64,000 bases of DNA from Macrostomum lignano (GCA_002269645.1 NIVC01001556.1:240673-304672); one strand, 5' to 3'. Shown: positions 7,887 through 63,522, counted from the stretch's first letter. Notes: generated from the sequence alone by a model not told the origin. A program made the numbers and translations.

Positions 7887-7995
7887 TGAAATCATTATTA
7901 ACGCTTGACAGATAACAGCCTGATTTTGCTTTCGTATTTCCTGCACGGAATTATCGCAGGCAATGAGGCCTGAACGGACCGCCGTTCTGGCTTTG

Positions 7996-8003
7996 CTTTT
8001 ATA
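7996..8003 (-). promoter_or_regulatory. TATA box (TATAAAAG) of the neuropeptide gene
   Basis: Exact TATAWAWR match 110 nt upstream of the ATG at 7886, on the coding strand. Confidence 0.5.
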
Positions 8004-8364
8004 TCCTCGCTTAGCTGTCCGCATTCCTCATTAGTGGATCCATCAATCGCTTTGACAGGTTCTGATAATCAAAGACTGTCAAATGGGCTCGTGCCGAACT
8101 TGGCTTTGCCGTCTCTTTGAGCTCGAATGGATACGCAGATGCGCAACTGCGCACTCCGGCGACAACTTTGTGGAAATACAACAACGTGCCAACTGTCTGT
8201 AATTATCAAAGCCTGAAATTTTGTGTCCTGTGTGAATGAAACTAACGGTGAATTGAAAGCAATTATCTCTTATTTAGGCCGTGGGGTCTAAATTTAGCAC
8301 ACTTCATGCTGTACTGCAACTGGTAATCCGGTTCTGACTGGCTTATTCCGACCTTGAAGTTGTT

Positions 8365-9205
8365 AATCCAGAAGTTTTTATCCCTAAGCCTGAAGCTTCA
8401 TCCATGATCCTGAAGCTTTCATCCCTAATCCTGAAGCTTTCATCCATGATTCTGAAGCTTTCATCCATGATCCTGAAGCTTTCATCCATGATCCTGAAGC
8501 TTTCATCCATGATCCTGAAGCTTTTATCTATGATCCTGAAGCTTTCATCCATGATCCTGAAGCTTTTATTCATGATCCAGAAGTTTTTATCCCTAATCCT
8601 GAAGCTTTCATCCATGATCCTGAAGCTTTTATCTATGATCCTGAAGCTTTCATCCATGATCCTGAAGCTTTTATTCATGATCCTGAAGCTTTCATCCATG
8701 ATCCTGAAGCTTTCATCCATGATCCTGAAGCCTTTATTCATGATCCTGAAGCTTTCATCCCTGATCCTGAAGCTTTCATCCATGATCCTGAAGCTTTCAT
8801 CCATGATCCTTAAGCTTTCATCCATGATCCTGAAGCTTTCATCCCCAATCCTAAAGCTTTCATCCATGATCCTGAAGCTTTCATCCCTAATCCTGAAGCT
8901 TTCATCCCTAATCCTGAAGCTTTCATCCCCAATCCTAAAGCTTTCATCCATGATCCTGAAGCTTTCATCCCAATCCTAAAGCTTTCATCCATGATCCTGA
9001 AGCTTTCATCCCTAACCCTGAAGCTTTCATCCATGATCCTGAAGCTTTCATCCCTAACCCTGAAGCTTTCATCCATGATCCTGAAGCTTTCATCCCTAAT
9101 CCTGAAGTCATCATCCGTAATCCTGAAGTCATTCATCCCTAATCCTGAAGTTTTCAGCCTTAATCTTGAATGCTTCATTCTTAATCCTGAAGTTTTCACC
9201 ATCCT
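8365..9205. repeat. Minisatellite, 21 bp unit (ATCCTGAAGCTTTCATCCATG)
   Basis: About 40 copies; produces the spurious MDESFRI and MILKLSS repeat ORFs. Confidence 0.95.
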
Positions 9206-23679: not shown

Positions 23680-24026
23680 GGCAGGGGGTTGTGTGCACCC
23701 TGGCGCACTTTAAGCAACATAGGCACACAACCGGCAAAAGGCATTGTTGCCCATTCCGCCAACTCCCTTGAGCAGGCATACAAGCACGCGGATATGTATG
23801 CAGGCACACACTCACACAGGAGTGTACAGCGGCCCTAACTTTATATTATCATTAGGCATGTACATTTCACTGCGCCTTGGGGGGTTGGCTCTCAAGGCCA
23901 TTAATTGCACAAGCAGAGCCAAGCCAAGAATTCCAATTCAGCCCCAAATTAATGTGACTGCACTTGGAATTGAGCCTGGGTTGCTAGCACACCAGAGCAG
24001 CTGTGCTACCACTAGGCTACGGCCCC
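23680..24026 (-). mobile_element. tRNA-derived SINE (second family), near full length
   Basis: Minus-strand head GGGGCCGTAGCCTAGTGGTAGCACAG...CCCAGGCTCAATTCCAAG has an A box (TAGCCTAGTGG) and a degenerate B box. The body is shared with copies at 25905-26045 and 32850-33985 (plus-strand CCCATTCCGC..., GTGTACAGCGGCC, GCGCCTTGGGGGGTTGGC, GCCCCAAATTAATGTG). Confidence 0.7.
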
Positions 24027-25041
24027 ACAGCCATCAACCTCAGTCCCTCATAAATCTTGTTAAGATTTTGGTCTTGCTGTCTAGATCGATACATACTCCA
24101 AATGCTGCATGCAGCATGGCTGCATATGCAATGTCTAGCTGTCTCTCCAAGGCATCTGTCAGGGTCTAGGTCTTAGCATTGTACAATAGTTATAGAAATT
24201 TTATTAGCTTTAAAATACAGAATAGATATGGATACAGATAGGCTATGAGAACATTTTTGAGATATGGCTATAGATATGGATGTGGGAAAAAATTGGTTAT
24301 AACGGAACTAAAGAAATTATATATATTTGAATAAGTTGCGATATTACAACTATTTTGTTTAAAATAACATATTCTAGTAAAAAATAATATAGGTATTCAT
24401 TGGTTTTAACATAATATTCTAAATGGCAACCTATTCTATTAGTTATTATCAAAATAAAAAGGGAATTATTAGTATAGGACCATGGTCAACAGTCTTAAGT
24501 ATTAGCATAGGATATACCATATATATATATATAAGATTTTTTATACCACTATCTAATTTTTCTTATAACCTATCTATATTTGTATCTATAGCTAATTATA
24601 AGTTAATTTTTTATTACTTCTTACTTTTATTGATAATAAATCCAATGGCAATTGTTTTTCTATTCATTTCCTACATAAAGAATGATCTAGCAATAGTTTA
24701 CCTTATCACTTAGTAATAGTTTTTGTTTATTTATTATATAAGAAAGAAAATTGGTGGTAGTGAATTCATATTAACTTTAAAAATATGCACAATATAATCA
24801 AGGACTTCAATGGTCTTTTTAAGTCTTAGTTAGCTAATATCACTAAATATGGTATGTTCCCATAACCATTAACCACAGCCACCTGATGCATAACTGGTGA
24901 TGCTATCAGTTAATGCACTAATAAAGGATTATATCAATATTTCTGGTGATTGCTGAAAGGTATAAAATTACAGTAGTTTACCATTGTAGTTAAGCATAAT
25001 ACCCTATTTAAAGTGCAAAAACTGTTGATGTCCAGTTGCCA

Positions 25042-28000
25042 ATGTCTATGTCCCTAGCCGAGGACGATGACAAGGAGCTCTACATTGATGACTCCGGCTG
25101 TACTGGCGCCTTCTACAATCCGCGCGCTTCCCTCAGCTTAGAGCAGCAGCGCCAAGCACTGCCAGTGTACAGAGTGCGTTCCCACCTGCTTTACCTGCTG
25201 GAGATCAAGCAGACACTTGTACTAGTTGGCGAGGCTGGTTCTGGCAAAAGCACACAGGTGTGAACATCCATGTTCGTTTTTTTTCCATTTCTAATATTTT
25301 TACTAACAGTAGCGTGTAACGTAAAGTTTTATTATAATTGCATTTGGCAACTCAAGTTTCGTTTGAAGTATCAAATTTGGATTCTTGGGATTTGCATACT
25401 TTTGAAATAAGTGAATATTAGTGGGTGTCTCATCAGCTCGAATTCGAAATCTCGAGATTAAAAACACAACTCGATAGCAAAATTAACTTTGATTTTTGTG
25501 TTTTGCATTTAAACAGCATTAAAAATGATAATTTAGTCGTAAGGTTTTGTCGTTTTCTTCTCGTCGGATCTTTCATCTGGTAAACTCTCCCGCTCGCCGC
25601 AGGTGCCACAGTACCTAGTTGAAACTGGCTGGACCTCGGACGGCCGGCAGGTGTGCGTCACTCAGCCCCGGCGCGTGTCGGCCGTCACCCTGGCGTCTCG
25701 GGTGTGCGACGAGGCCGGCTGGCGGCTTGGCGAACAGTGCGGCTACGCTGTGAGATTTGCCGACTGTCGCAGCCAGGCCACCCGGGTGCTGTTCGCCACT
25801 GACGGCGTGCTGGTGCGACTGCTGGCTAGGGATCCTCTGCTGCAGGACTTCTGCGTTGTTATGGTAATTCAGGTTTTTTTGTTATTGCTTCATTTTTGCT
25901 GACATCTCATCGCACAAACAGCGCTGACGGCAATTCTGCCCATTCCGCTGGCTCCTGGCTAAGGACCGCTGTACACTCTGTTCGAGCGCGTGTCTGCGTA
26001 CACCGTATCTGTGTGTTTGCTCAAAGGTCAGCGGAATGGACATGGACCTAGCTCGGTTTGCTCAATGCTCCTTGACCCTCACCCGATAGAGCCAGGTAAA
26101 TAAAATATGACCAAATTACGAGCGTAACTTTGACCCCGCCAGGTGGACGAAGCTCACGAGCGCACGTTTCACACTGACCTGGCGCTGTGCCTGCTTCGCA
26201 AAGTCCAACGCCGCCGACCGGATCTTCGTGTAATCGTCTCGTCTGCCACCATCGATGCCGACGCTTATTTAAAGTTCTTCGGCGATTCCGCAGCCTGCCT
26301 GTCTGTTGAGGGCCGGCAATATCCGGTTGATATTCACTATTCTGCCAGTCCCGTGCCCTGCTACATGGCTGCCGCTTTGGACACTGTATTGGCTATTCAC
26401 AGGCGCTGCGGCCCAGGCGGTGTGCTGGTGTTTCTCACCGGTCAGGAGGAGGTGCTCCGGCTGGTGCAACAGCTGCGCGAGGCCGCTATAAAGGTGCGTT
26501 CTAGGAGTCCACTGATGATTTGGAAACCAAGGGGTTGTCGTGTGATTTACACCCGTGAGGATTGTGGGACCCGCAGGATATCTAACTAAAATTTCTGACA
26601 GGAGCACATCTTTTGGAGTAAAAAAATTACATAAAACTGCACTTCGCCTTTCAAGAAACCTAAAACAATAAGCCACAGTATCACTATACACCCGAGTTGC
26701 TGACCGACTGATTTGTCCATACAAAAGATAATAATAATCTCAGTAAGTACATGTGGGAGCACGAGAATTTCCCGCCGAGATTTGGCCGCAATGCAATTTG
26801 CCCGCTATGCTGTTTTAATGCAGCGCATTTAGCCACTCGGCAGATCTTGTCTGCATTGCCCCCCCCCCAAATGCTTAGTACTGCATAAGTCTTAATAAAG
26901 AGATTTGTTGGGGGCCAAACCGGCATATATGCATCCCTACTGAATACCCTACAAGAAAAACATGCATTTGATATGCAGTTACTATCAAAACGTTTCGATC
27001 GCGTTAATCTCTTTATAAAGAACTTACCAAGACAAAATCTGCCACGTGGCTAAATGCGCTGCAGAATTGCAGCATTGCGGGCAATTCTTATGGACCCGGT
27101 ACATGTATACAGGAAAGTCTATGACGTACCACTAGTCGTTTCACAAACAAAATAGTGATGCTTCTTTAAAGATTTTATGTTGCTACTTTGTGCGCATACT
27201 TCTCAATTCGTCTTGTCGCTTGTAGCAGCAAAATGTTAAAACTTGCAACTTATTTTATTGTTATATGAAACATTCAGACATACCTGTATACAGGGTATAG
27301 GCATAAATATAGTTAATTCTATAAAGTTATTGCATTGAAAATAAAGCATAGGTCCATATCTGAGGCTCATACTTAGCGCGACGTAGACTCTTAAAAATTC
27401 TGAACAAGCATACTAACAATGCTGCTTAGAAACTGAAGCTGTAAAGAATAACAATGAGAAATAGAAGAAATGGATTCTGTTATACCAGTACTTCTGTAAA
27501 AATGAATATAATTAAACCAATTCATTCGCGGCGCCAGTATCGCTGAGACGGCTGCGCCCGACTATCCCTATAACGCGAGCGCCGCTCCTTGAACTGAACG
27601 GATTTGGGCGTCGGTGGCATCTGCTGATGCGTGTAGCGATGCCTATAACCTTCCTGGCTTCTGTCGGGCTCGTAGCCTCTGAAGTCGTCTCTGAACTGTC
27701 CCTCATCCAAGTCGGAATAATCAGTTTGAGTGTCCACTTCATCGCTAAGCCTACCAGTTGGCGCAGTGCGATGCTGGTCATGTTGAGTAAAACGTCTTCT
27801 GCTCCTGCTAGAGTCGTATGGTCGACTAGCCGGCGGAGGCCACCTGTCGAAATCTGAGGGCCCCATCGGGGCGCCTGTTTCATCGAAAGCTCTAGTTTGA
27901 AGATATCGCTGTTGACGGTGACGCTGTGGCGGCGGTGACGACGGCGGTGAAGCGAATTGAGCAGCAGAAGGCGTCTGCATAGTCCGCCGGGTTGATGGCC

Positions 28001-28834
28001 CTCGATGGGATCGTGTTTGCATTGAAACTGCAGGCGAATCGGGTGTCATCTTTACGGACGATAGTGATTGTTGGGCCGGAAAATTTGTCGAAAGACGGGC
28101 GCAACAGTTGCCACAGCGGCGGCACTCGAATGACCGAATTAGAAGCGACAGATCGACATGAGGACAGCTGAAGATGGGCTTTATTTGCTGCTTAGTTTCT
28201 CTCCAGCCGTCTCCGTCTCGAGGTGGCCCCTCGACTGACCCTGACGAAAATAATTCGTCGTCCAACTCGACTCTATCGTTGCGAACTGCTTGCTTATGCA
28301 GGCTACCCTTGTTAAGTGCCCGGCTGTTGAAGCGATAATCAATTGCGGGCGAGGCCTCGTTGCCGCTGCTGCCGCTAATGCTGGAATCGCTACCGTCGTA
28401 GTAATCATCTGGTGGGTAGTAAGAATGCGGTCGTCGATGCCGTCTTGGCTCTGGAACTGCGGAATCGCGATGGAAATCATTCAGCGGCCTTAGACGCTGT
28501 CTCCGGGCGGCTTCAGCGTCAGTCGATGATGCCATCGGCTCCGGCTCCGTAGGGAAGGCCCCGTAACTCCGACGTCGCCCAGAGTGGCGGCTATCGCCAG
28601 CAGAATCAGCAGCTAGTGGCGGTGGTGGCGGTGGCGCCGGTGGTGGTGGTGGGGGCGGTGGCGGTGGGGCCGACCGAGCTGCAGTGTGCCGTCTCGCATA
28701 ATGACTACGCTGCGGCGGACTCAAACCAATCGGAGCGAAACGCGAGTCTCCGCCTCGTTCCGATACTCTTGAACTGCTGCTCGTCCTCTGAGCAATGTCA
28801 GGTACCTGCCAGTCGGATTGGTGCTGCCTCTGTC

Positions 28835-28866
<32 letters not shown>

Positions 28867-31800
28867 AAATGTAATTGTTGTTGTTTCTGCTGGCTTCTTT
28901 GCTGTCGTGGTGTGTCACCTTCGCTTACATCGGACGGAAATTCGAGGACGCTGTCAGGGACGCGATAGTCGCCGAATACTGGCATCCGTTCGATCGGGCC
29001 AATTTGCCGTTGCGAAATATTTTTCATCCAGCTTGTCAATATTTTTTTAACTTGAACTGAAGCGTCAGCAACATACAAGGCGGAACATTTGGCCTTGTAT
29101 ATTTAAAGCTGTTACTATCCTTAGTACGCATCTTATGCCGACGCACATTCGGAATCCAATAAGTTGAGCCATAGACACTGCAGCTTATACGCGCAGCAGT
29201 TTTTCTCGACCATGGATAATACAAGGACTACTTTAGTAGATGGACGGGAAACTAAGTTTCTTGAAAAATTTTAGGAGACAAAAGGTTTCGGAAATACATT
29301 ACGGAGATTAGAAGGCAGACCCAATGTTCATATTTTGATGTCTTACCTACCTATTTTATCAATCTGTTACACATTTTGATACACAGTCAGCTAAGAATAA
29401 TAAAATAGATTCATAAACCAATGAGCCGAGCCATTTTTATGATTTTTAGGCACATGACGTACAATTGTACACACAGGATTTAAAATTAACATACAATCCT
29501 AATTTTCTAAACAAAAAGCTCTATCAATGTCAGCTATAAGAAATCCAAGACCTATCATAAGGTAAACATTGGGTCTGCCTCCTAAAAGTTTCCAAGAAAC
29601 GTAGTTTCCCGTCCATCTACTAAAGTAGTCCTTGGCATAAAATACTTTTTTGATAAGTCGCTCTGCAGCAATTCAAGACTTGCAGAGAATCAAAGCAATT
29701 TAACTGAATATAAGTAACTAATTAATATATACGTTAATATTAATATATGCCTTCACCTTCTGTACCCGAATCCTCCTCGTCTGCAGAGCTCCTCTGGACA
29801 ACAGTTGAAGGTGTTCGCCTTATACGGCGGCCAGAGTGCTCGCCAACAGTTGCGCGCCTTCGAGAATGTTGGCCAGGCCAATCGCAAGGTAGTGGTGGCC
29901 ACTAACTTGGCCGAGACCTCCGTCACCGTGCCCGGAATTCGCTATGTTGTCGATTGCGGATTTCAAAAACTGCGCGTATTCGATCCGCGCACCGGCTTAG
30001 AGTCTCTGGCCGTCTGTCCGGTGTCAGCCTCGGCCGCTGAGCAGCGGGCCGGCCGGGCTGGTCGCACCCAGTCCGGCGCGGTGTACCGCCTCTACCCGGA
30101 GTCTGAGGCGGCTCGCCAGCTGCCCCACACCCCGGCAGAGCTGGAGCGATGCGATCCCAGCCCTCTGCTTCTGCAGCTGCTGTCCATGGGCGTGCGCGAT
30201 TTGCGGCGATTCAACTTCCTAAGCGCTCCAGCACCCGGCGCTATGGCTCGCGCCTGCGAACTTCTGCGCGCGCTCGGCGCTCTCGATTCCGAGGCGCGTC
30301 TGACTTCGCTTGGCGCCAGAATGGCCGAACTGCCTGTGGCGCCGATGCTAGCGCGCAGTCTACTAGCTGGCGCGGAATTAGGCTGCGGCGCTGATATCTG
30401 CGGATTAGCCGCCTGTCTACAGGTAGATGTAGCTGATGTCTGCGGATTAGCCGCCTGTCTACAGGTAGATGTAGCTGATATCTGCGGATTAGCCGCCTGT
30501 CTACAGGTAGATGTAGCTGATATCTGCGGATTAGCTACAGGTAGATGTAGCTGATGTCTGCGGATTAGCCGCCTGTCTACAGGTAGATGTAGCTGATGTC
30601 TGCGGATTAGCCGCCTGTCTACAGGTAGATGTAGCTGATATCTGCGGATTAGCCGCCTGTCTACAGGTAGATGTAGCTGATATCTGCGGATTAGCCGCCT
30701 GTCTACAGGTAGATGTAGCTGATATCTGCGGATTAGCCGCCTGTCTACAGGTAGATGTAGCTGATATCTGCGGATTAGCTGTAGGTGTCTACAGGTAGAT
30801 GTAGCTGATTACTGCGGATTAGCTGTAGGTGTCTACAGGTAGATGTAGCTGATATCTGCGGATTAGCTGTAGGTGTCTACAGGTAGATGTAGCTGATATC
30901 TGCGGATTAGCTGTGGGTGTCTACAGGTAGATGTAGCTGATATCTGCGGATTAGCTGTAGGTGTCTACAGGTAGATGTAGCTGATTACTGCGGATTAGCA
31001 GTAGTTGTCTACAGGTAGATGTAGCTGATTACTGCGGATTAGCTGTAGTTGTCTACCGGTAGATGTAGCTGATTACTGCGGATTAGCTGTAGGTGTCTAC
31101 AGGTGGATGTAGCTGATTACTGCGGATTAGCAGTAGTTGTCTACAGGTAGATGTAGCTGATATCTGCGGATTAGCTGTAGGTGTCTACAGGTAGATGTAG
31201 CTGATATCTGCGGATTAGCTGTAGGTGTCTACAGGTAGATGTAGCTGATATCTGCGGATTAGCCATAGGTGTCTACAGGTAGATGTAGCTGATATCTGCG
31301 GATTAGCAGTAGGTGTCTACAGGTAGATGTAGCTGATTACTGCGGATTAGCAGTAGGTGTCTACAGGTAGATGTAGCTGATATCTGCGGATTAGCTGTAG
31401 GTGTCTACAGGTAGATGTAGCTGATATCTGCGGATTAGCAGTAGGTGTCTACAGGTAGATGTAGCTGATATCTGTGGATTAGCTGTAGGTGTCTACAGGT
31501 AGATGTAGCTGATTACTGCGGATTAGCAGTAGTTGTCTACAGGTAGATGTAGCTGATTACTGCGGATTAGCTGTAGTTGTCTACCGGTAGATGTAGCTGA
31601 TTACTGCGGATTAGCTGTAGGTGTCTACAGGTAGATGTAGCTGATTACTGCGGATTAGCAGTAGTTGTCTACAGGTAGATGTAGCTGATTACTGCGGATT
31701 AGCTGTAGTTGTCTACCGGTAGATGTAGCTGATTACTGCGGATTAGCTGTAGGTGTCTACAGGTAGATGTAGCTGATTACTGCGGATTAGCAGTAGTTGT

Positions 31801-32678
31801 CTACAGGTAGATGTAGCTGATTACTGCGGATTAGCTGTAGTTGTCTACCGGTAGATGTAGCTGATTACTGCGGATTAGCTGTAGGTGTCTACAGGTAGAT
31901 GTAGCTGATATCTGCGGATTAGCCATAGTTGTCTACAGGTAGATGTAGCTGATATCTGCGGATTAGCCATAGGATTTACTATACCTAGTTTTGTTTTGAG
32001 TAAACGGCTTGAGTAACCATTGCTGTAATATGATAAGCAAATGCTTCGTCATCTACTTAGAAAGAATTCCTACCTTGATTTAATTTACCTAATCAACCAT
32101 TACTTCTCCAAAAGGTGCGCGCCCTATTCCTGGTGCCGCAGCATCGCCGCAACGCGTCGAGACGGGCCAAGCGGACCTTCGCCTGCCAGGAGGGCGACCA
32201 TCTGACCATGCTGAATGCGTTGCGCGCCTACGAGAGTCGAGCAGCTACTCTGGCGCCTCAGCGGCTGTCGCAATGGTGCGCCAAGCATTTCCTTAGCCAG
32301 CGCGCCCTGTCCCGCGCCTCCGAGCTGCGTCGTCGAATTCAGCTGGCGCTCGGCCTGCCGGACGCGCAGAAAGTGTCCGATTATCGATTGATCCTGCGCG
32401 CCCTGGCAGCCGGACACTTCGCCCAGGCGGCCCGGCTGCTGCCTAGCGGCGAACGATACGAAAGTCTGAGAGGCGGGCACCCGCTCTACCTGCACCCGGG
32501 CTCAGTGTTGCACAGCGAGCGCTGGCCGCAATGCGTTGTATTCACCGATCTGGAGAGTGCCGGAGATAAATTCATGATGGAATCGGTTAGCTCTGTTGAG
32601 CCTGGCCTGCTGGTTGAACTGGCGCCGCATTACTATGCCTACGGCACCGAGGCTGAACGGCTTATGGGCTCCGTTTGA
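25042..32678 (+). CDS. DHX35: DEAH-box ATP-dependent RNA helicase DHX35 orthologue, about 675 aa, 5 exons
   Basis: Exons 25042-25257, 25603-25863, 26143-26493, 29787-30422, 32115-32678, all phase 0 GT-AG. Motifs: YNPRASLSLEQQRQALPV (DHX35-like N-terminus), GEAGSGKSTQ (Walker A), TQPRRVSA, VDEAHER, SSAT, FLTGQEE, ATNLAETSVTVPGI, QRAGRAGR, EGDHLTMLN, LHPGSVL. The 5' end may extend to the acceptor at 25034-25035. Confidence 0.93.
26755..27097. mobile_element. MITE-like element with long imperfect inverted repeats, in DHX35 intron 3
   Basis: Ends GGGAGCACGAGAATTTCCCGC and GCGGGCAATTCTTATGGACCC are inverted, and 26790-26845 is inverted relative to 27028-27085. A related partial copy lies at 43560-43742. 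No clear TSD. Confidence 0.65.
27522..29027 (-). CDS. Nested antisense gene in DHX35 intron 3: about 500-aa low-complexity Q/P/S/R-rich protein with a Cys cluster, function unknown
   Basis: Uninterrupted frame 29078-27522 with first ATG at 29027, GC-rich like the other exons. Contains poly-Gln, poly-Pro and CPH...CRRCGNCC. AATAAA on the minus strand at 27259-27254. No recognisable domain; start uncertain. Confidence 0.65.
29222..29634. mobile_element. MITE, about 413 bp, TIRs beginning CAAGGACTACTTTAGTAGATGGACGGGAAACTA
   Basis: 33-bp perfect inverted repeat (29222-29254 vs 29602-29634), extending to about 56 bp with few mismatches; AT-rich non-coding interior; no convincing TSD. Confidence 0.85.
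30391..31972 (+). repeat. Minisatellite (42 bp, then 44 bp unit) made of the DHX35 exon 4 / intron 4 junction
   Basis: Unit = last 32 nt of the exon (CTGATATCTGCGGATTAGCCGCCTGTCTACAG) + first 10 nt of the intron (GTAGATGTAG). About 36 donor-like sites from 30423 to 31939. Confidence 0.95.
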
Positions 32679-32849
32679 GCAAAATTTGCACTTTTAGCGC
32701 TAATTAGATGGCGAGGCATCTACCTTATGTAATACAGTCGCGTTTGTGTAAATACAAATACTGATTTTGTGGATATCCCAGTGAAACTTGTAAAACTTTT
32801 CTTCGTTTTTTTCTATCTTATTTCTATTAATAATGATAATTATTATTAG

Positions 32850-33985
32850 GTATTAGTGATATTGCAGGAAGGCTGCGGGCACCCGGCAGTGGCGTCGCCA
32901 GGAATTTCAAATGGGGGGGGCGGGTTGGCCTGGCTGGCCATGTCTTATGCCATTGCGACTTTTGGCGCCGCAGGCGCTCAGTTTAGCGCCGTAGGCACTC
33001 ATTTTGGCGCCGCAGGCACTCATTTTGGCGCCGCAGGCACTCATTTTGGCGCCGCAGGCACTCATTTTGGCGCCGCAGGCACTCATTTTGGCACCTCAAG
33101 CAAGCACTCATTTTGGCACCTCAAGCAAGCACTCATTTTGGCGCCGCAGGCACTCATTTTGGCGCCGCAGGCACTCATTTTGTCGCCGCAGGCACTCATT
33201 TTGGCACCTCAAGCAAGCACTCATTTTGGCACCTCAAGCAAGCACTCATTTTGGCGCCGCAGGCACTCATTTTGGCGCCGCAGGCACTCATTTTGGCGCC
33301 GCAGGCACTCATTTTGGCACCTCAAGCAAGCACTCATTTTGGCGCCGCAGGCACTCATTTTGGCGCCGCAGGCACTCATTTTGTCGCCGCAGGCACTCAT
33401 TTTGGCGCCGCAGGCACTCATTTTGGCACCTCAAGCAAGCACTCATTTTGGCACCTCAAGCAAGCACTCATTTTGGCGCCGCAGGCACTCATTTTGGCGC
33501 CGCAGGCACTCATTTTGGCGCCGCAGGCACTCATTTTGGCACCTCAAGCAAGCACTCATTTTGGCGCCGCAGGCACTCATTTTGGCGCCGCAGGCACTCA
33601 TTTTGGCGCCGCAGGCACTCATTTTGGCGCCGCAGGCACTCAATTGCCTCCTGGTTTTTTGGTATCCGCCGCGCCCAACCCCACCCAGGCGATTGAGGGG
33701 GGGGGGGGCGCCCCCCCCCCTGGCTACGCCACTGGCACCCGGGCACAACGCCCATCGTCCCACACGCCAGCGTTGACGGCCATTCTGCCCATTCCGCTGA
33801 CTCCTGAGCACATTCAAGCACGCACTCACACACACGCTCACACGGGTGTACAGCGGCCTGACTTTCTAATCGTCAGGCATGTACACTCTCTGCGCCTTGG
33901 GGGTTGGCCCTCATGGGTGTGAATCGTGAATCACACGACAACCCCAAACCGGCCCCAAATTAATGTGGTCGCGCCAAATGTCAAA
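32850..33985 (-). mobile_element. 5'-truncated copy of the second SINE family, split by the hAT MITE
   Basis: 33743-33985 aligns by eye with 23700-23960; 32850-32886 continues it on the other side of the insertion. Confidence 0.6.
32887..33734. mobile_element. Non-autonomous hAT-type DNA transposon (848 bp) with internal 21/25 bp minisatellite
   Basis: 16-bp TIRs CAGTGGCGTCGCCAGG and CCTGGCTACGCCACTG (1 mismatch); perfect 8-bp TSD GCACCCGG at 32879-32886 and 33735-33742. Interior array (GCACTCATTTTGGCGCCGCAG)n at about 32957-33645. Confidence 0.9.
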
Positions 33986-34111
33986 TGTAGTCAAATGTAC
34001 TACAAGCTAAATTAGCTAAGTAAGTGTTACTAGTAATCGAAAGTATTTGAAAATAATTTTTGCCAAGTCTTCGAACCTCTACACACTATTCGACCTCCTT
34101 CGCCATCCCAG

Positions 34112-36238
34112 TCGGACGAATCTTTGCCGTCAATTCGCATTCAATGCGGCGACGGCGAGGAGCTCATCGCCAGTCGGGCCGACCTTGTACTGTCCGGCGG
34201 CGCCTATTTCTCGGCCATGCTAGAGCGCAGCCGGATGTCCGAATCGCTGACCGGTTTAGTCCGGTTGCCCGACCTTCAGTTCGGCCAGGTGTCCGAGTTT
34301 CTTCGCGCGGCGCTGCACGCCGACTATAGCGAATCGGCTGGCCAGATTGACCGGCTGTGGCGGCTGCTGCGGCTGGCGATGAGGTTCCAGGCCGATCAGG
34401 TTCTGCAGGGCTGCTGCCAGCGCCTTGCCGACTGCGCCTTCGGCAGCGAGGATGAGCAGCAGCGGAAGGCGGACCCGGCAGAACCGGCAGTGCCGCTGGC
34501 CTGCGCGCTGGCCCGGCTGTCCGGCTGCCGCGTTACCGGCGCCGCTGCCGCTCTGGACCGCCTGCTAAGCCGCTTGGCCGGCGCTGATCTGTCCGAGCTG
34601 GCCGGCAGTCCCGCCTGGCTCCGCTGCTGCCGACGAAGCCTGCACGCCGAGGTGCTTCGACGCGCGGCAGTCGACTGGCCGGCCGACTGGCTGGCCGCCG
34701 CGTCCTCCTGGTCCGGCCGACATCTAGAATCGACGTCCGACTTCCTGATTGACTGCCTCCGTCCGACTGAGCGACCAGCCGGCGCCAATATCGACGCGTC
34801 TTTGGCATTTCAGCAGAGACTTTTGGCTAGCAGGAAATCGCCGCCAGTGCTGCTGACCGGCCACGCCAGGGCGCCGCGCAGGGCATCCAACTTCGGCCTC
34901 GTCGAAGTCGGCCGATTGATGCCGCTACGCTCCGCTGATTGGACCGCGTCGACGCCGTGTCACGTGATTGAGTCGCGCGACCTGCAAGAGATGCACGGCT
35001 ACTGCTTGTTGTCTATTGGCGATCGCTGGCTGATTGTCGGTGGCGAGAATGCCTACGGTCGGGGCATGTGGGTGCGCGAGGTGCGCGAGTTCACGACGCC
35101 GCCGTTGTCGTCGGAACTTTCGGCGACAAAGCCGGAGCTCGGCCGGCTATTGGCGGAGCTGCCCTACCCTGTGCGCGATCACTGCGTCTGCACGGACGGG
35201 CGTCGTCTGTTTGTTGCCGGCGGCGCCACCACCTATCGAAAGCTGTCTAATAAAGTCTGCTATTTGGATTTGGAAACTGGTAAATTGATGCATACGTGTA
35301 TTGTACTGATTTTTAACAGGTAACACTGCGTAGACCCTAGAATACCGCGGAGTGGGGTGGGTGTTTCGTAAACCCTAGAATACCGCGGAGTGGGGTGGGT
35401 GTTTTGTAGACCCTAAATAACCGCGGAGTGGGGTGGGTGTTTCGTAGACCCTAGAATACCGCGGAGTGGGGTGGGTGTTATGACTTGTTAAAAGCTTATT
35501 CCGATTGGCAGTTTCCATGCTATTTTTACTGTACCGTACATGCAACATAAGCTATTGATAAATGACAGCCGCACTATACACAGGCACCTGGACCAGTCTG
35601 CCGCCCCTGCCTAGCCGCATGTACGGCCTTCGATCTGCCGCAGTCGACGATCTGCTCATTGTGTACCACTGCCGCACTCCTCACATAGTGTTCTGCTGGG
35701 ACCTGCGCGGCCCTCCCGGCCAGATGTGGACCCAACTGTCCGCTATCGATCTGCTGTCGTTTCTATATTTCAATCGCAAATCCACCGGAGAGAAGGCCCT
35801 ACTCATTGATTTCCTGCAGGTGAAAAGTTTCTCCTTTGTCGGCTGCGGGCGTCACCTGTTGTTCGCATTCGACAACGCTGTGCGCGGCCCGTCGCCCTAT
35901 CCAGGCGCGATGGCGATGCATTTCGGCGATTTCCGCACCCTCCTGCGCTGCTTCCTGGATCATCGGGCCAAGCCGGAGCCAGGCGGGGATCCCGAGGCGC
36001 CATTTGCCAGGTGTGAGCACTGCTGCTTATAGTAGGCGGTATGGCTTTTTTCTATCAGTAGGACGCGATTGAAATTAAAGTTGAAAATAAATTTACCAGC
36101 TGTCTGTCTGTCTGTTGGTCTGTCTACATGTATCTATCTGTCTATCTATCTATCAATCTATCTATCTATCTATCAATCTATCTATCTATCTATCTATCTA
36201 TCTGTCTATTTATCTATTTATCTATCTATATATCTATC

Positions 36239-36269
<31 letters not shown>

Positions 36270-36391
36270 CTATCTGTCTATTTATCTATTTATCTATCTA
36301 TCTATCTATCTGTCTACCTATCTATTTATTTATCTATCTATCTATCTATCTATCTATATATCTATCTATCTATCTACATATCTATTTATCC

Positions 36392-36433
<42 letters not shown>

Positions 36434-36498
36434 TTATCTATTTATCTATCTATCTATCTATCTATCAATCTATCCATCTATCGATCTATCTATCTATC

Positions 36499-36529
<31 letters not shown>

Positions 36530-36989
36530 TTATTTATCTATCTATCGCAGGTTCACAGGCAGCAGAGAATTCCGCATCGACCTGTTGCTTGTCCGCGAGG
36601 CCGACGAGTTGGCCAGGTCCACCGCCGCGACCGGCACTTTCCTGGCCGGGCTGGCCTCGGCCGCGGCAACGCTGGTCACGGACAATCGGGACACCGTCTG
36701 GATGCTGGAAGCGACCGAGTCGGACGCTGTCCGGGTCACCGAGTGCCATCTGTCGAGGAGGCGAGACGAAGTGCTTTCAATGGAGTCGATGGTCGCGCCC
36801 TTGGATGCTTCAACTGATGGACACACGCTTGCAACCGGCATCAACGATGGCCGATTGACTCTGTTGCCAGTGACGGCCGCTGCTGGCGATGATCAGGTGG
36901 CGGATGGAGAACCAACACAGTATGACAATGATGCCGTCTGCTTGTGCGACTGTCCAGAGCACTATGGCTGGGAGTTGGACTCTTTTTGA
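34112..36989 (+). CDS. BTB/POZ + degenerate Kelch-repeat protein, at least 3 exons, no ATG upstream of the BTB domain
   Basis: Exons 34112-35279, 35584-36010, 36551-36989 with matching phases. BTB signature YFSAMLERSRMSESLTGLVRLPDL...LLRLAMRFQADQV...C; Kelch-like motifs IVGGE, LPYPVRDHCVC...LFVAGG, WTSLPPLP. In-frame stop at 34034; first in-frame ATG (34217) falls inside the BTB; strong acceptor CCCAG at 34107-34111. Confidence 0.8.
35330..35480. repeat. Tandem repeat, about 38 bp unit (GTAGACCCTAGAATACCGCGGAGTGGGGTGGGTGTTTC), in BTB-Kelch intron
   Basis: 4 copies. Confidence 0.85.
36103..36545. repeat. (TATC)n microsatellite filling a BTB-Kelch intron up to the acceptor
   Basis: About 110 units ending TCTATCGCAG at 36550. 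Confidence 0.97.
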
Positions 36990-37059
36990 GCTAGCGGAGC
37001 TAAATTTTTGTTGACTTTACGTTTACGTTTTGAGGAAGTAGTAAGCTGACGAATTTAGC

Positions 37060-37370
37060 CAGGAATGTGGCGGAGTGGGGTGGGTGGTTAGGGGCAGGAA
37101 TGTGGTGGAGTGGGGTGGGTGGTTAGGGGCAGGAATGTGGCGGAGTGGGGTGGGTGGTTAGGGCCAGGAATGTGGCGGAGTGGGGAGGGTGGTTAGGGCC
37201 AGGAATGTGGCGGAGTGGGGTGGGTGGTTAGAGGCAGGAATGTGGCGGAGTGGGGTGGGTGGTTAGGGCCAGGAATGTGGCGGAGTGAGGTGGGTGGTTA
37301 GGGCCAGGAATGTGGCGGAGTGAGGTGGGTGGTTAGGGCCAGGAATGTGGCGGAGTGGGGTGGGTGTTTT
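37060..37370. repeat. G-rich minisatellite, 35 bp unit (GGCCAGGAATGTGGCGGAGTGGGGTGGGTGGTTAG)
   Basis: About 9 copies downstream of the BTB-Kelch stop. Confidence 0.92.
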
Positions 37371-37759
37371 ATGCCATCTAGCGTTATCTGCTCTTCCAGT
37401 TATCTAACTTCATAGTAGAGGGTTAAACATTTTCTAAGCAAATTTTCTGCACATACTCTACTCTACCGTATAATTGAGTGAGTCAAACTGCATGCTTTAA
37501 ATTGCCATTTAATTGGCCTACGCTGTGATAAATCTTCATGCCATTCTCTATCAATCCCGAGGGCATTTTAACCTTAACTTTGCATCCTGACTGATTACGT
37601 AATCAAATATATGCTTTCAGCAACTGCCGCATGATATTTTAATTTCTGTAAAGCAGGGTAAAATCGTTTTTTTAAGAATTTTGTTGATTCTTTTATAGTA
37701 TCTTAATAAGTTCTATCTACCTGTGTCACCCTCCGTTGAATCCACCGGGAATCGCCATT

Positions 37760-38070
37760 GAACTCTATCAGGGAATTGCCACTGAACTCCATCATGAATC
37801 GCCACTGAACTCCATCATGAATCGCCACTGAACTCCATCAGGAATCGCCACTGAACTCCATCAGGAATCGCCACTGAACTACATCATGAATCGCCACTGA
37901 ACTCCATCATGAATCGCCACTGAACTCCATCAGGAATCGCCACTGAACTACATCATGAATCGCCACTGAACTCCATCAGGGAATCGCCACTGAACTCCAT
38001 CAGGACTTGCCACTGAACTCCATCAGGGAATCGCCATCGCCACTGAACTCCATCATGAATCACCACTGAG
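37760..38070. repeat. Minisatellite, 23 bp unit (GAATCGCCACTGAACTCCATCAT)
   Basis: About 13 copies. Confidence 0.92.
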
Positions 38071-39038: not shown

Positions 39039-42000
39039 ATGAAACTAAACCAGCTTAGTCTGCGACCGAATGGAAGCAGCTCAGCCACCGCCGGACAGAG
39101 CACCCTGGCCGGACAGAAGCAGAAGCGAATGTCGCTGAACCGGCCAGAAAATGCTAGTCGCTTGGCCTGCTACTATGCCATGTTTCTCACACTGTGCGGT
39201 CTGGTGCTCACCATCTGCGTGCTGGAACACACCAATAACTCCAGGTTTAGTCAGGCCGCGCAATGGACTCAGCTCGTCTTCTTTCTGTGCGTGCTCACAG
39301 GTATGATGGCGAGGTTCTCTTTGCAATTGTGCTCACAGGTATGATGGCGAGGTTCTCTTTACAATTGTGCTCACAGGTATGATAGCGAGGTTCTCTTTGC
39401 AATTGTGCTCACAGGTATGATGGCGAGGTTCTCTTTGCAATTGTGCTCACAGGTATGATGGCGAGGTTCTCTTTGAAATTGTGCTCACAGGTATGATGGC
39501 GAGGTTCTCTTTGCAATTGTGCTCACAGGTATGATGGCAAGGTTCTCTTTGAAATTGTGCTCACAGGTATGATGGCGAGGTTCTCTTTGCAATTGTGCTC
39601 ACAGGTATGATAGCGAGGTTCTCTTTGCAATTGTGCTCACTGGTATGATGGCGAGGTTCTCTTTGCAATTGTGCTCACAGGTATGATGGCGAGGTTCTCT
39701 TTGCAATTGTGCTCACAGGTATGATGGCGAGGTTCTCTTTGCAATTGTGCTCACAGGTATGATGGCGAGGTTCTCTTTGCAATTGTGCTCACAGGTATGA
39801 TGGCGAGGTTCTCTTTGCAATTGTGCTCACAGGTATGATGGCGAGGTTCTCTTAGCTTGTGCTCACCAAGTGTGATGGCGAGGTTCTTTTAGCTTGTGCT
39901 CACAGGTATGATGGCGAGGTTCTTTTAGCTTGTGCTCAAAGGTATCATGGCGAGGTTTTTTTAGCTTGTGCTCACCAAGTGTGATGGCGAGGTTCTTTTA
40001 GCTTGTGCTCACAGGTATGATGGCGAGGTTTTTTTAGCTTGTGCTCACCAAGTGTGATGGCGAGGTTCTTTTAGCTTGTGCTCACAGGTATGATGGCGAG
40101 GTTCTTTTAGCTTGTGCTCACAGGTTTGATGGCGAGGTTCTCTTAGCTTGTGCTCAAAGGTATGATGGCGAGGTTTTTTATCTTGGAAAATTTGGACTCC
40201 AATATGGGATGGGAATATTTCTTCTGATGGTCCCAAGTACACTTTGGACAAACTTAGGTTTCCTATTCACAACTCTGCACCACAGTGGCTCTCGCCTTCC
40301 TGTTCTGGCTGATGGGTCACGTGATGCGCCTTCCGCCCCAGGCGGTGCCGCAGCGCCAGATCAGGGAGTTCCGAGGCAGGGCCAACTCCATCTCCGTGTA
40401 CGCCGGAGGCTGTGCAACCGCCCCCGCCGCCTCCACTACCTCCGCCGCCGTTCCCGGCCAGTCTGTCTACATGGGCCGCCGCAACTCCGACGACATGCAC
40501 GTGTACGACAACTTCCGCGATCCAAAGTACACCGTGCCCGAGGCCAGCCCGGAGGAGGAGGAGCGCGGCGATCAGGACGACGACGTAGAAACCGAGGCGG
40601 CGGCCGGCGGCAAGGCGGAGGGCAACGACAGCGGCGGCGGCGGGGTGGGCAACGCCGCTTACGTTGTTGACGAAGACGCGACCGCTCCGACGAGATCGAT
40701 CGTCGAGTCGTCGTCGTCTTCGTCAGCGCTGACCGCAACAACAACGGTTTCCTCGTCGCCGTCGCCAGCTCCGGCCGCGTCGATGCGACGACTGCAGATG
40801 CAACTGCCGAAGCCGCGGCCTCCTTCGGCGCCGTCGACCCTGTCTCCGACGCTGTCCAGATCGGAGCAGCAGCTGCACAGGAAGCACCGGCTGAACACCA
40901 TCACCATCAACAGCGCCCTGGACCTGCACATCACGGAGATCCCGCCCTACACCGTGCTAACCAAAGGCGAAGCTCATTCGCCCTCGTTTTTCTTGCGCAT
41001 CGCCGCCATCGTGTTCGGCTGCGCAGGCGTGGTGAACATGCTGGTGAAGGCGGTGGACGCCCTGCTTGGCCTGTCCAGCTCCAAGAGCCAAGCCCTAGAA
41101 GTTTTCACCGTCCTGCGCTGCTTGGTGAACATCGCCTTCAACTGCGTGCAAACATTTTTTCTGTTCAAATACAGCAAGATCTCCATCGCCTACAGACAGA
41201 AGGCCTGCCTGTTCGGCCTCATGCACCTGCTGGCCACCAACTTGTGCCTGTGGATCGGCGACCTCGGCGAGGAGAAGCTGCACAAGTACCACAAGCTGTA
41301 CAGCGGCGCCAAGAACGGCAGCAGCGGCAAGCACAGCGGCAGCCTGTCCAGCCTCATGTCGCCCTACCTGTACCCCTTCAACATCGAGTACAGCCTGATG
41401 GCGGCCTTCTTCTGCCACGCCCTGTTCCGCAACGTCGGCACCTTCATCAGCCTGCTGGAGGGCCGCGGCCTGCACGTCGAGCGAAAAAGCCTGTCGATGC
41501 GCAATCGAACGAAAACTCGATTCAGCGTCAGTTGTCACAAATCTACCAAGGGCCTGCTGCTCGGCATGGGTCTTGTACTGGCCGTTGTCTGCGTCTCAGC
41601 CTATGTGCTCAACCTCGAGGAGGTCAAAGGCAGCCGGGCTGACGATTCGCGGAAAGAGAAACGGTTGATCATCTCCAGCGTGATGCTGACCCTGCAGGCG
41701 GTTCTGCTGGCTATGGTGATCCCTGTGGTGATGGCGCTGCGTCGGCTGCCAAGCCAGCAGCAGCAGTGTCCGGTGGGCCACTCTGAGCAGCACTGCAGCG
41801 GCGGCGCCCTGGCCGACAAGCTCATGCTGCAGCTGGGACTCGCCGCCGTGATCGTCTCGCAGCTGTACGTCCTGCTGGAGGTGGCGGCCAGCTGCAGCAC
41901 CGACAAACCGATCGTGGATCAGGCTGGCCTGGCCATCAGGGTCTGCGAAGCCCTTGCCATCATGCTGCAGAGCGCTCTGCAGGTGCTGGTGCTGGACCTT

Positions 42001-42300
42001 GGCCTCGAGCGCAGCTTCCACCTGGCACCGCCGATCAGCCAGGGCCTGGTGACCGCCCTGATACCGGCTAACCTGGCCGTGTGGGTTCTGTACACCTTGA
42101 CCGGCCCCGTGAGCAGTCTGGACCAATCGGAGACGAGCAGAGTTATCTCCGCTCTCTGCCTGCCAGTTACTATCTTCTTTCGCTTCCATTCTGTTGGCTG
42201 TTTCGCCGAGCTGTGGAAAATTCTGCAACGGGCAAGCGAAAACAATGAGGTGGCATTTGAACTGAGCGGTGGGGTGATATCGACTGTAACTGGTCGTTGA
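39039..42300 (+). CDS. OTOP: Otopetrin-family proton channel, 758 aa, 2 exons
   Basis: Exons 39039-39300 and 40286-42300 (phase 1). Otopetrin motifs SFFLRIAAIVFG, VQTFFLF, FGLMHLLATNLCLW, YLYPFNIEYSLMAA, CHKSTKGLLLG, PANLAVW, IFFRFHS. Orthology within the family not assignable. Confidence 0.9.
39290..40175 (+). repeat. Minisatellite (38 bp, then 36 bp unit) containing the otopetrin exon 1 donor (GTGCTCACAG|GTATGA)
   Basis: About 23 copies; donors at 39301, 39339, 39377 and onward; distal units diverge. Confidence 0.95.

Positions 42301-55152: not shown

Positions 55153-63522
<8,370 letters not shown>

What the first reader, a model, noticed from the sequence alone, without database searches (positions are those of the whole stretch)
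32678..34217. BTB-Kelch gene has no usable start codon: candidate spliced-leader-donated AUG and DHX35 / BTB-Kelch operon
Seen: the BTB frame is closed by TAA at 34034, and its first ATG (34217) lies inside the BTB fold after YFSA, so it cannot be the start. A strong pyrimidine-rich acceptor (CTCCTTCGCCATCCCAG|) opens the frame exactly in phase 0 at 34112 (TCG GAC GAA TCT...). The gene follows DHX35 on the same strand after 1.43 kb, of which about 1.1 kb is a hAT MITE plus a SINE; without these the gap is roughly 300 bp, and I see no convincing upstream coding exon there. DHX35 also starts at an in-phase acceptor (TCCAG|TTG CCA ATG, 25036). Known: flatworm spliced leaders end in a conserved AUG, shown in Schistosoma to act as initiator Met, and flatworms resolve polycistronic transcripts by SL trans-splicing. 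Inference: SL-AUG + TCG GAC GAA gives a natural N-terminus MSDESLPSIRIQC, so this protein could only be made after trans-splicing.
Basis: partly seen in the sequence, partly recalled or inferred. Interest (0 to 1): 0.75.

Follow-up and report, generated by a model that had tools for sequence, protein, structure and literature searches.

The report
Flatworm gene borrowing its start codon
A Kelch-repeat gene of the flatworm Macrostomum lignano has no start codon of its own and most likely gets its AUG from the spliced leader RNA added to its message, a mechanism already known from schistosomes.

Summary
The window is Macrostomum lignano. In the window and in two paralogous loci, the reading frame is closed by TAA 78 nt upstream of a pyrimidine-rich CAG acceptor (34111|34112). 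The first in-frame ATG is 35 codons downstream (34217). The first ATG of any frame after the acceptor (34144) is out of frame.

The species has a single 35-nt spliced leader ending in ATG. Joined at 34112 it reads ATG TCG GAC GAA, which is in frame.

The public Mlig_3_7 annotation sets its gene boundaries from SL-containing reads. It starts the 5'-partial gene model within 0-3 nt of this acceptor in both paralogs. It also names DHX35 and this gene g1/g2 and g5/g6 of one transcriptional unit.

All three copies keep an intact 677-codon ORF under purifying selection (pN/pS 0.09-0.23). No credible upstream coding exon exists. I saw no reads, so trans-splicing and SL-AUG initiation are inferred, not shown.

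The mechanism is known from Schistosoma (Cheng et al. 2006), so this is a new member of a known kind and mainly an annotation fix.

One thing is unexplained: the 199 bp upstream of the acceptor is as conserved as an exon.

The parts
25036..32678 (+). DHX35 gene with five phase-0 exons: 25036-25257, 25603-25863, 26143-26493, 29787-30422, 32115-32678. Its own ATGs are at 25042 and 25048. The stop is TGA 32676-32678.
   Evidence: The exon chain rebuilt gives 677 codons, with 2 aa differences from the L001 copy. The L001 copy rebuilt is an exact match to PAA71462.1 (BOX15_Mlig020814g1). The best PDB match is human DHX35, at 653 bits against 507 bits or less for other DEAH helicases.
25031..25035 (+). 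TCCAG acceptor in front of DHX35 exon 1, in phase with the ORF. In L001 and L002 the annotated 5' end instead implies TTGCAG|TC, 5 nt upstream. In the window that upstream site reads TTGATG.
   Evidence: The protein starts QLPMSMS, so the transcript start falls in the 3 nt right after TTGCAG|.
32679..34111 (+). DHX35 to BTB/Kelch spacer of 1433 bp. It is either an outron or an intercistronic region.
   Evidence: 60 + 146 + 376 bp are shared with L001 and L002. The paralogs' spacers are about 890 bp.
32887..33734 (.). Window-specific non-autonomous DNA transposon (hAT-like MITE). It has 16-nt TIRs and 8-bp TSDs (GCACCCGG) at 32879-32886 and 33735-33742. It carries a 21-bp tandem array at 32960-33642.
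   Evidence: The empty site is present in L001 and L002.
33786..33916 (.). A second copy lies at 23748-23897 (76% identity).
   Evidence: There is no tRNA-like head.
33913..34111 (+). Unusually conserved non-coding block directly upstream of the acceptor. It includes a perfect GTAAGT at 34020-34025.
   Evidence: It has 1 variable column in 199, against 5.7-8.1% in the rest of the spacer and 3.3% in intron 1. There is no Rfam match. The RNA fold z-score is -3.2.
34034..34036 (+). In-frame TAA that closes the reading frame 78 nt upstream of the acceptor.
   Evidence: The same holds in L001 and L002.
34095..34111 (+). Polypyrimidine tract plus CAG: the proposed SL trans-splice acceptor (CTCCTTCGCCATCCCAG|).
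   Evidence: The 5'-partial CDS of PAA89358.1 starts at the first base after this CAG in L002, and that of PAA71464.1 starts 3 nt later in L001.
34112..35279 (+). BTB-like/Kelch gene, coding exon 1. It begins TCG GAC GAA (S-D-E) and has no in-frame ATG before 34217.
   Evidence: The rebuilt models reproduce P0001 and P0002 exactly.
34144..34146 (+). First genomic ATG downstream of the acceptor. It is out of frame (+2) and opens an 89-codon junk ORF.
34217..34219 (+). First in-frame ATG, at codon 36. It lies inside the weak BTB match (residues 9-105).
35584..36010 (+). BTB-like/Kelch gene, exon 2.
36551..36989 (+). BTB-like/Kelch gene, exon 3, with stop TGA at 36987-36989.

Best explanation
The gene is the Macrostomum lignano BTB-like/Kelch gene of the Mlig020814.g2 / Mlig002147.g6 family. 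I propose that it is transcribed as part of a precursor that runs on from DHX35. That precursor is cut by SL trans-splicing at CCATCCCAG|TCG (34111|34112).

The 35-nt spliced leader ends in AUG. After splicing, the mRNA reads ...UUGCAUG-UCG-GAC-GAA. The leader's AUG is then the first AUG on the message and is in frame, giving M-SDESLPSIRIQC...

The genome encodes no in-frame AUG before codon 36, and the first genomic AUG is out of frame. So the full-length protein can only be made from the trans-spliced mRNA.

Shown here: the sequence layout in three copies; the SL sequence (from the literature); gene-model 5' ends at the acceptor; shared transcriptional-unit names; purifying selection on the ORF.

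Inferred: that SL is actually joined at this site; that ribosomes start at the SL AUG; that DHX35 and this gene share one promoter.
For: 1. Species and SL. The exon is 99.7% identical (1 of 389 aa; shown as 100) to M. lignano PAA71464.1. The SL is CGGTCTCTTACTGCGAAGACTCAATTTATTGCATG (PMC8629364; PMC5173321). It is not encoded in the window.

2. Layout conserved in three copies: TAA at -78 nt, first in-frame ATG at +35 codons, first ATG out of frame. The near-cognate TTG at 34124 is TCG in the paralogs.

3. Annotation. Mlig_3_7 gene boundaries were cut at peaks of SL-containing reads by the TBONE pipeline, and ORFs were called by TransDecoder (PMC5730564). PAA89358.1 starts at the first base after the CAG and PAA71464.1 starts 3 nt later. 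Both are labelled 'partial'. An unspliced or cis-spliced model would have extended the ORF upstream.

4. Operon. DHX35 is Mlig020814g1 and Mlig002147g5. This gene is Mlig020814g2 and Mlig002147g6. The paper's own example of a two-gene unit is named the same way. The shared spacer is about 582 bp, below the published 1-kb repeat-adjusted threshold.

5. The gene is functional. The ORF is intact at 677 codons in all three copies, with pN/pS 0.09-0.23.

6. No conserved ATG-to-phase-0 donor with a good GTRAG motif exists in the spacer.

7. Precedent. All flatworm SLs end in AUG. In S. mansoni more than 40 cDNAs need the SL AUG (Cheng et al. 2006, as cited in PMC9851317, and PMC12582326). A Macrostomum genome paper calls the SL ATG a translation start codon (PMC10468722).
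Against: - No SL-joined read, cDNA or peptide was seen. The trans-splice site is inferred from CDS coordinates of the annotation.
- The acceptor hexamer TCCCAG does not match the enriched [T/C]TNCAG motif at its second position.
- The L001 model starts 3 nt after the junction, not exactly at it.
- The 199 bp upstream of the acceptor is as conserved as an exon. It could be an internal promoter, which would weaken the operon part.
- A perfect GTAAGT lies 92 nt upstream and could compete by cis-splicing.
- The raw spacer is 1.43 kb, long for an operon.
- The SL AUG has a weak Kozak context (U at -3, U at +4).
Confidence: 0.68

Rival explanations
1. The start-codon mechanism is the same (SL trans-splicing, SL-donated AUG), but there is no operon. 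The gene has its own promoter in the conserved 199-bp block (33913-34111) and a short outron. The shared transcriptional unit in the annotation would then reflect DHX35 read-through or a long DHX35 3' UTR.
For: The block has 1 variable site in 199 among three copies, against 35 in 669 in the flanking spacer plus intron 1. About 60% of trans-spliced M. lignano genes are not in operons. Spacers of 0.9-1.4 kb are long compared with the roughly 100-bp mode.
Against: The two genes carry consecutive gene numbers of one transcriptional unit in two independent paralogous loci. The repeat-adjusted spacer is under the 1-kb rule. The conserved block could equally hold DHX35 3'-end or intercistronic signals.
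Confidence: 0.25
2. The acceptor at 34112 is used in cis, and an upstream exon supplies the AUG. One candidate is the conserved mini-exon ATG GGT|GTGAAT (33913-33918), which would give MG-SDES.... The other is any DHX35 exon. All DHX35 donors are phase 0, so a read-through DHX35-BTB fusion would be in frame.
For: ATG GGT|GTGAAT is conserved in all three copies. All DHX35 exon ends are phase 0. Flatworm acceptors are often shared between cis- and trans-splicing (PMC12582326).
Against: The RNA-seq-based models in two paralogs end at the acceptor, with no upstream exon and a 5'-partial ORF. GTGAAT lacks the +5 G of the GT[G/A]AG motif. The strong GTAAGT donor at 34020 would end its exon on an in-frame TAA.
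Confidence: 0.06
3. Translation starts inside the genomic sequence. It would start either at a near-cognate codon (TTG 34124, ATT 34133 or 34139, CTG 34190) or at the downstream AUGs 34217 or 34235, giving an N-terminally shortened protein. The SL AUG would be irrelevant.
For: The SL AUG has a weak context. UniProt models of the older assembly start even further downstream.
Against: The SL AUG would be the 5'-most AUG and it is in frame. TTG 34124 is TCG in both paralogs. A scanning ribosome that skips the SL AUG first meets the out-of-frame ATG at 34144. The UniProt models start with V, so they are themselves fragments.
Confidence: 0.08
4. The locus is a decaying or non-translated gene copy, so the missing start codon simply reflects loss of function.
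For: No ortholog was found outside M. lignano in 1.84 billion representatives. The gene lies in a repeat-rich neighbourhood.
Against: The ORF is intact at 677 codons in three diverged copies. There are 12-16 synonymous against 4-8 non-synonymous differences, giving pN/pS 0.09-0.23. The gene is transcribed, according to the transcriptome-based annotation.
Confidence: 0.03

Closest known systems
SL-AUG-initiated mRNAs of Schistosoma mansoni (Cheng, Cohen, Ndegwa and Davis 2006, J Biol Chem 281:733; 'slORFs' in PMC9851317)
   Same: The flatworm SL ends in AUG. The acceptor is in phase with the ORF. There is no genomic in-frame AUG upstream of the conserved part of the protein. The full-length protein depends on trans-splicing.
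   Different: The species is different: a free-living, early-branching macrostomorph. The papers I could search hold no experimental or systematic analysis of SL-AUG use in this species. Here nothing is shown at the RNA or protein level.
Macrostomum lignano operons as defined by Ustyantsev and Berezikov 2021 (PMC8629364)
   Same: The two genes are adjacent on the same strand. The downstream gene is annotated from an SL site. The repeat-adjusted spacer is under 1 kb. Transposon insertions inflate the raw spacer, as that paper describes.
   Different: The spacer is far from the roughly 100-bp mode. A 199-bp block next to the acceptor is under strong constraint, which that paper does not describe.
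C. elegans operons with SL2 trans-splicing and the Ur element
   Same: A polycistronic precursor is resolved by trans-splicing. A conserved element may lie between the poly(A) site and the acceptor.
   Different: M. lignano has a single SL and no SL2-type specialisation. Nematode SLs do not end in AUG. The function of the conserved block here is unknown.
BTB-BACK-Kelch (KLHL) Cullin-3 substrate adaptors
   Same: An N-terminal beta-beta-helix segment gives a weak BTB profile match. Kelch motifs lie further downstream.
   Different: BTB is below Pfam's threshold. No BACK domain was detected. Only one Kelch motif passes its cut-off. There is no ortholog outside M. lignano.

Membership tests
Flatworm SL-AUG-initiated ORF (Cheng et al. 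2006 type) | The host has a spliced leader whose 3' end is AUG. | tested here: met
   The species was identified as M. lignano. The SL ...TTGCATG is reported in PMC8629364 and PMC5173321.
Flatworm SL-AUG-initiated ORF (Cheng et al. 2006 type) | The mRNA is SL trans-spliced at the acceptor in question. | tested here: inconclusive
   The evidence is indirect only. The 5'-partial CDS models of two paralogs start 0-3 nt after the CAG, and the annotation's boundaries come from SL reads. I saw no reads.
Flatworm SL-AUG-initiated ORF (Cheng et al. 2006 type) | The SL AUG is in frame with the main ORF. | tested here: met
   ATG|TCG GAC GAA is phase 0 in the window, L001 and L002.
Flatworm SL-AUG-initiated ORF (Cheng et al. 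2006 type) | There is no genomic in-frame AUG that could give the full-length protein, and the frame is closed upstream in the outron. | tested here: met
   TAA lies at -78 nt. The first in-frame ATG is at codon 36. The first ATG of any frame is out of frame.
Flatworm SL-AUG-initiated ORF (Cheng et al. 2006 type) | Translation actually initiates at the SL AUG. | not testable with these tools
   This needs ribosome profiling, N-terminal proteomics or a reporter.
M. lignano operon (Ustyantsev and Berezikov 2021 criteria) | Adjacent same-strand genes, with no opposite-strand gene between them. | tested here: met
   DHX35 stops at 32678 and the acceptor is at 34112. The spacer holds only repeats.
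M. lignano operon (Ustyantsev and Berezikov 2021 criteria) | The repeat-adjusted intergenic distance is below 1 kb, with the downstream gene trans-spliced. | tested here: met
   The raw spacer is 1433 bp. About 577 bp remain without the MITE, and 582 bp are shared by all copies. The trans-spliced status is indirect, as above.
M. lignano operon (Ustyantsev and Berezikov 2021 criteria) | One precursor transcript spans both genes. | tested here: inconclusive
   The annotation names put both genes in one transcriptional unit (Mlig020814 g1/g2; Mlig002147 g5/g6). I did not see the read coverage itself.
M. lignano operon (Ustyantsev and Berezikov 2021 criteria) | There is no promoter between the two genes. 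| not testable with these tools
   The conserved block 33913-34111 could be a promoter. This needs RAMPAGE/CAGE data.
BTB-BACK-Kelch (KLHL) protein | BTB/POZ domain. | tested here: inconclusive
   Pfam BTB scores 17.5 bits against a cut-off of 20.5, E = 0.0047, over residues 9-105. There is no PDB sequence hit. The AF2 model has low confidence over residues 1-55, but it does show a strand-strand-helix start. Foldseek hits to Keap1-BTB and SKP1 have E > 0.1.
BTB-BACK-Kelch (KLHL) protein | BACK domain. | tested here: not met
   There is no BACK family among the Pfam hits at E <= 0.1.
BTB-BACK-Kelch (KLHL) protein | Six-bladed Kelch propeller. | tested here: inconclusive
   One Kelch motif passes its cut-off (Kelch_1 25.3/20.1; Kelch_6 28/25.3). 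The propeller-level model scores 30.5 bits against a cut-off of 50. Remote hits cover only residues of about 300-450.
DHX35 (DEAH-box helicase) | Best match to DHX35 over the other DEAH helicases, across the full length. | tested here: met
   Human DHX35 (9s2f) scores 653 bits over residues 12-670. The next best is 507 bits, and DHX8, DHX16 and DHX15 score 481 bits or less.
hAT-type MITE | Terminal inverted repeats, an 8-bp target-site duplication, no transposase ORF, and an empty site in paralogs. | tested here: met
   The TIR is 16 nt and 94% complementary. The TSD GCACCCGG is present twice. The interior is a 21-bp tandem array. L001 and L002 lack the element. The superfamily assignment rests on TSD length only.

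The most novel reading that the evidence does not exclude
The 199-bp block next to the acceptor, conserved at exon level, is a cis element that couples 3'-end formation of the upstream gene to SL trans-splicing in flatworm operons. It would be a functional counterpart of the nematode Ur element in a single-SL system. Together with the obligatory SL-donated AUG, it would make this protein's synthesis strictly dependent on trans-splicing, a regulatory switch rather than a passive quirk.
Probability: 0.12. Interest if true: 0.55.

Novelty: new member of a known kind. Interest (0 to 1): 0.3.

Why it matters
If confirmed, this is a clear example in a free-living, early-branching flatworm of a protein that cannot be made without the AUG donated by the spliced leader. 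That would extend the schistosome finding across the phylum.

The practical value is in annotation. GenBank lists this protein, and probably many other M. lignano proteins, as '5'-partial', when they are complete once the leader's AUG is added.

It also bears on transgene design in this model organism. A reporter built from such a gene needs either the acceptor or an artificial ATG.

Tried and rejected
- A word-indexed homology search with the last DHX35 exon returned nothing. I worked around this by rebuilding the 678-aa L001 protein and looking it up exactly.
- Full HMMER search of 1.84 billion representatives. It found only M. lignano copies plus generic Kelch hits, so no orthologous N-termini were available to compare.
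- PDB sequence search with the N-terminal 201 aa gave no hit.
- The single-sequence AF2 model had mean pLDDT 62, and below 50 over residues 1-55. Foldseek against the PDB found nothing below E = 0.1. The fold argument for BTB therefore stays weak.
- Full-text and supplement searches for Mlig020814 and Mlig002147 found nothing.
- Cheng et al. 2006 is not held in the library.
- Rfam found nothing, either on the whole window or permissively on 33700-34200.
- The SL sequence is not in the window, so there is no local SL gene and no genomically encoded leader.
- I considered and rejected the strong GTAAGT at 34020 as a coding donor, because its exon would end on an in-frame TAA.
- I also rejected the 13-codon ATG...GGT|GT exon seen in L001. 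Its frame is broken in the window and in L002.

Full report
**Identity of the window.** The first coding exon (34112-35278) is essentially identical to GenBank PAA71464.1, 'hypothetical protein BOX15_Mlig020814g2, partial [Macrostomum lignano]'. Its 90% cluster also holds PAA89358.1 (Mlig002147g6, partial) and three shorter UniProt models named 'BTB domain-containing protein'. I fetched two paralogous loci of assembly Mlig_3_7, L001 and L002. The window is a third copy: residue 5 is L instead of S, and the transposon content differs.

**The observation.** Reading the sequence gives these features:
- DHX35 ends at TGA 32676-32678.
- An in-frame TAA sits at 34034-34036.
- The acceptor is CTCCTTCGCCATCCCAG|TCG GAC GAA, with the junction at 34111|34112.
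- The first in-frame ATG is at 34217, which is codon 36.
- The first ATG of any frame after the acceptor is 34144. It is out of frame and opens an 89-codon junk ORF.

L001 and L002 show the same layout. The only near-cognate codon close to the acceptor, TTG at 34124, is TCG in both paralogs, so it is not conserved.

**Is it a real, functional gene?** I rebuilt the three-exon CDS in all three copies. In the window the exons are 34112-35279, 35584-36010 and 36551-36989. The rebuilt L001 and L002 models translate exactly to P0001 and P0002. All three are 677 codons plus a stop. Pairwise pN/pS is 0.09-0.23, with pS 0.023-0.031. The ORF is therefore under purifying selection and is not a pseudogene.

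**What the protein is.** The Pfam results are:

| Pfam model | Score (bits) | Cut-off (bits) | Region |
|---|---|---|---|
| Kelch_1 | 25.3 | 20.1 | residues 355-399 |
| Kelch_6 | 28 | 25.3 | residues 356-399 |
| BTB | 17.5 | 20.5 | residues 9-105 |
| BACK | not detected | | |

A full HMMER scan of 1.84 billion representatives found only M. lignano copies plus generic Kelch hits over residues of about 300-450. A PDB sequence search with the N-terminus found nothing. The single-sequence AlphaFold model is unreliable over residues 1-55, although it does start strand-strand-helix as a BTB would. Foldseek lists Keap1-BTB and SKP1 only at E > 0.1. 'BTB-Kelch' is therefore a reasonable label but not a proven one. 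The out-of-frame ATG at 34144 is a more robust argument against downstream initiation.

**The spliced leader.** M. lignano has one SL, CGGTCTCTTACTGCGAAGACTCAATTTATTGCATG (PMC8629364). The 3' end ...ATTGCATG was found independently in PMC5173321. Spliced at 34112 it gives ATG TCG GAC GAA, which is in frame. The SL is not encoded in the window.

All reported flatworm SLs end in AUG. [quoted passage not shown] 2006, as reported in PMC9851317, and PMC12582326). A Macrostomum genome paper labels the SL's ATG 'translation start codon' (PMC10468722). The papers I searched contain no M. lignano-specific analysis of SL-AUG use.

**Evidence that this acceptor is a trans-splice site.** I could not see reads, but the Mlig_3_7 annotation is informative. 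Its pipeline (TBONE) cuts assembled transcriptional units at peaks of SL-containing reads and at poly(A) sites, and then calls ORFs with TransDecoder (PMC5730564).

In L002 the 5'-partial CDS begins at the first base after CCATCCCAG. In L001 it begins 3 nt later. If the transcript ran further upstream unspliced, the open frame would extend back to the TAA and the protein would start SKVFENNF.... If it were cis-spliced, residues from an upstream exon would be present. Neither is the case. A model 5' end at an AG| in two loci is what an SL cut produces.

**The operon.** I rebuilt the L001 DHX35 protein (678 aa, five phase-0 exons). An exact look-up shows it is PAA71462.1, BOX15_Mlig020814g1, and the L002 copy is Mlig002147g5. 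The downstream gene is Mlig020814g2 and Mlig002147g6. In that annotation, genes cut from one transcriptional unit share the prefix and are numbered g1, g2 and so on (Supplementary Fig. 5a legend of PMC5730564). So the two genes were assembled as one unit in two separate loci.

The spacer is made of these parts:
- 60 bp shared by all copies.
- A 320-bp insert found only in L001 and L002.
- 146 bp shared by all copies.
- A window-only MITE, 848 bp long, with 16-nt TIRs and an 8-bp TSD (GCACCCGG).
- 376 bp shared by all copies.

The shared spacer is thus about 582 bp. That is under the 1-kb repeat-adjusted rule of PMC8629364, though well above its roughly 100-bp mode.

**DHX35 itself.** Its best PDB match is human DHX35, at 653 bits against 507 bits or less for other DEAH helicases. 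It has its own ATGs at 25042 and 25048. The paralogs' models start QLPMSMS, which places the transcript start just after TTGCAG|TC. There the SL AUG is out of frame and would open a 9-codon uORF. In the window that site reads TTGATG, so only the in-phase TCCAG| remains.

**Search for an upstream coding exon.** I scanned every ATG in the spacer for a phase-0 GT before a stop, in all three copies. Only ATG GGT|GTGAAT (33913-33918) is conserved. Its donor lacks the +5 G of the species' GT[G/A]AG motif. The perfect GTAAGT at 34020 would end its exon on an in-frame TAA. Because all DHX35 exons end in phase 0, a cis-spliced DHX35-BTB fusion would be in frame. The annotation shows no such product.

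**An unexplained feature.** Among the three copies, the 199 bp immediately upstream of the acceptor (33913-34111) has 1 variable column. The rest of the spacer varies at 5.7-8.1%, intron 1 at 3.3% and exon 1 at 1.6%. Taking the flanks as the background rate, about 10 variable sites would be expected. The block has no Rfam match, and its RNA fold z-score is -3.2. It could be an internal promoter with a short outron, the DHX35 3'-end or intercistronic signals, or a non-coding exon plus a 92-nt intron. This is the main reason I keep the operon part at moderate confidence.

**Verdict.** The mechanism is known, so this is a new member of a known kind. Its main value is for annotation: the 'partial' GenBank proteins are complete once the SL's AUG is added. 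It is also a candidate for the first tested SL-AUG-dependent gene in M. lignano. My confidence is about 0.8 that the site is trans-spliced, about 0.7 that the SL AUG is the initiator, and about 0.55-0.6 that the two genes form a true operon.

Noticed in passing
window 33913-34111 (L001 9799-9997; L002 9802-10000): A 199-bp non-coding block directly upstream of the acceptor has 1 variable site among three copies, against 5-8% in the flanking spacer. It contains a perfect GTAAGT and several short uORFs. It has no Rfam match, and its RNA fold z-score is -3.2.
   Followed up: partly
window 30381-31967 (L001 about 7640-8370): A 42/44-bp minisatellite starts inside DHX35 exon 4 and copies its end together with the CAG|GTAGAT donor. 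The window has 31 donor copies. In L001 the first 8 donors stay in frame, each adding 14 aa. A UniProt model of 734 aa equals 678 + 4 x 14, so alternative donor choice or mis-annotation is likely.
   Followed up: partly
window 39291-39500: A 38-bp tandem array repeats the end of the first otopetrin exon together with its CACAG|GTATGA donor. This is the second case in the window of a minisatellite that duplicates a splice donor.
   Followed up: no
window 27522-29078 (- strand): A 518-codon ORF lies antisense within DHX35 intron 3. It is low-complexity (poly-Q, poly-P) and has no Pfam hit. It is annotated as a gene of 524 and 501 aa in L001 and L002.
   Followed up: no
L002 600-960 versus 1390-1750: A tandem duplication in one paralog covers DHX35 exon 1 and its upstream region, including the acceptor. 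The extra copy is annotated as a 76-aa gene.
   Followed up: no
window 25024-25035 versus L001 2307-2317: The annotated DHX35 trans-splice acceptor TTGCAG| of the paralogs reads TTGATG in the window. This leaves only the in-phase TCCAG| 5 nt downstream. It also puts a genomic ATG exactly where the SL's ATG would sit in the paralogs.
   Followed up: partly
L001 9169-9488; L002 9175-9493: An insert of about 320 bp lies 60 bp after the DHX35 stop in both paralogs and is absent from the window. The spacer was therefore hit independently by different insertions in different copies.
   Followed up: no
window 35329-35479, 36131-36546, 37058-37366, 37749-38069: Tandem arrays are dense in and around the BTB/Kelch gene: 38-bp x 4 in intron 1, (TATC)n x 104 filling intron 2, and 35-bp x 9 and 23-bp x 14 downstream of the stop. 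The 38-bp and 35-bp units share the motif GCGGAGTGGGGTGGGTG.
   Followed up: no
window 40285-42300 (+), 16088-16624 (+), 56393-57301 (-): The neighbouring genes are an otopetrin, a ligand-gated ion channel (glutamate-receptor type) and a glycine cleavage P-protein fragment.
   Followed up: no
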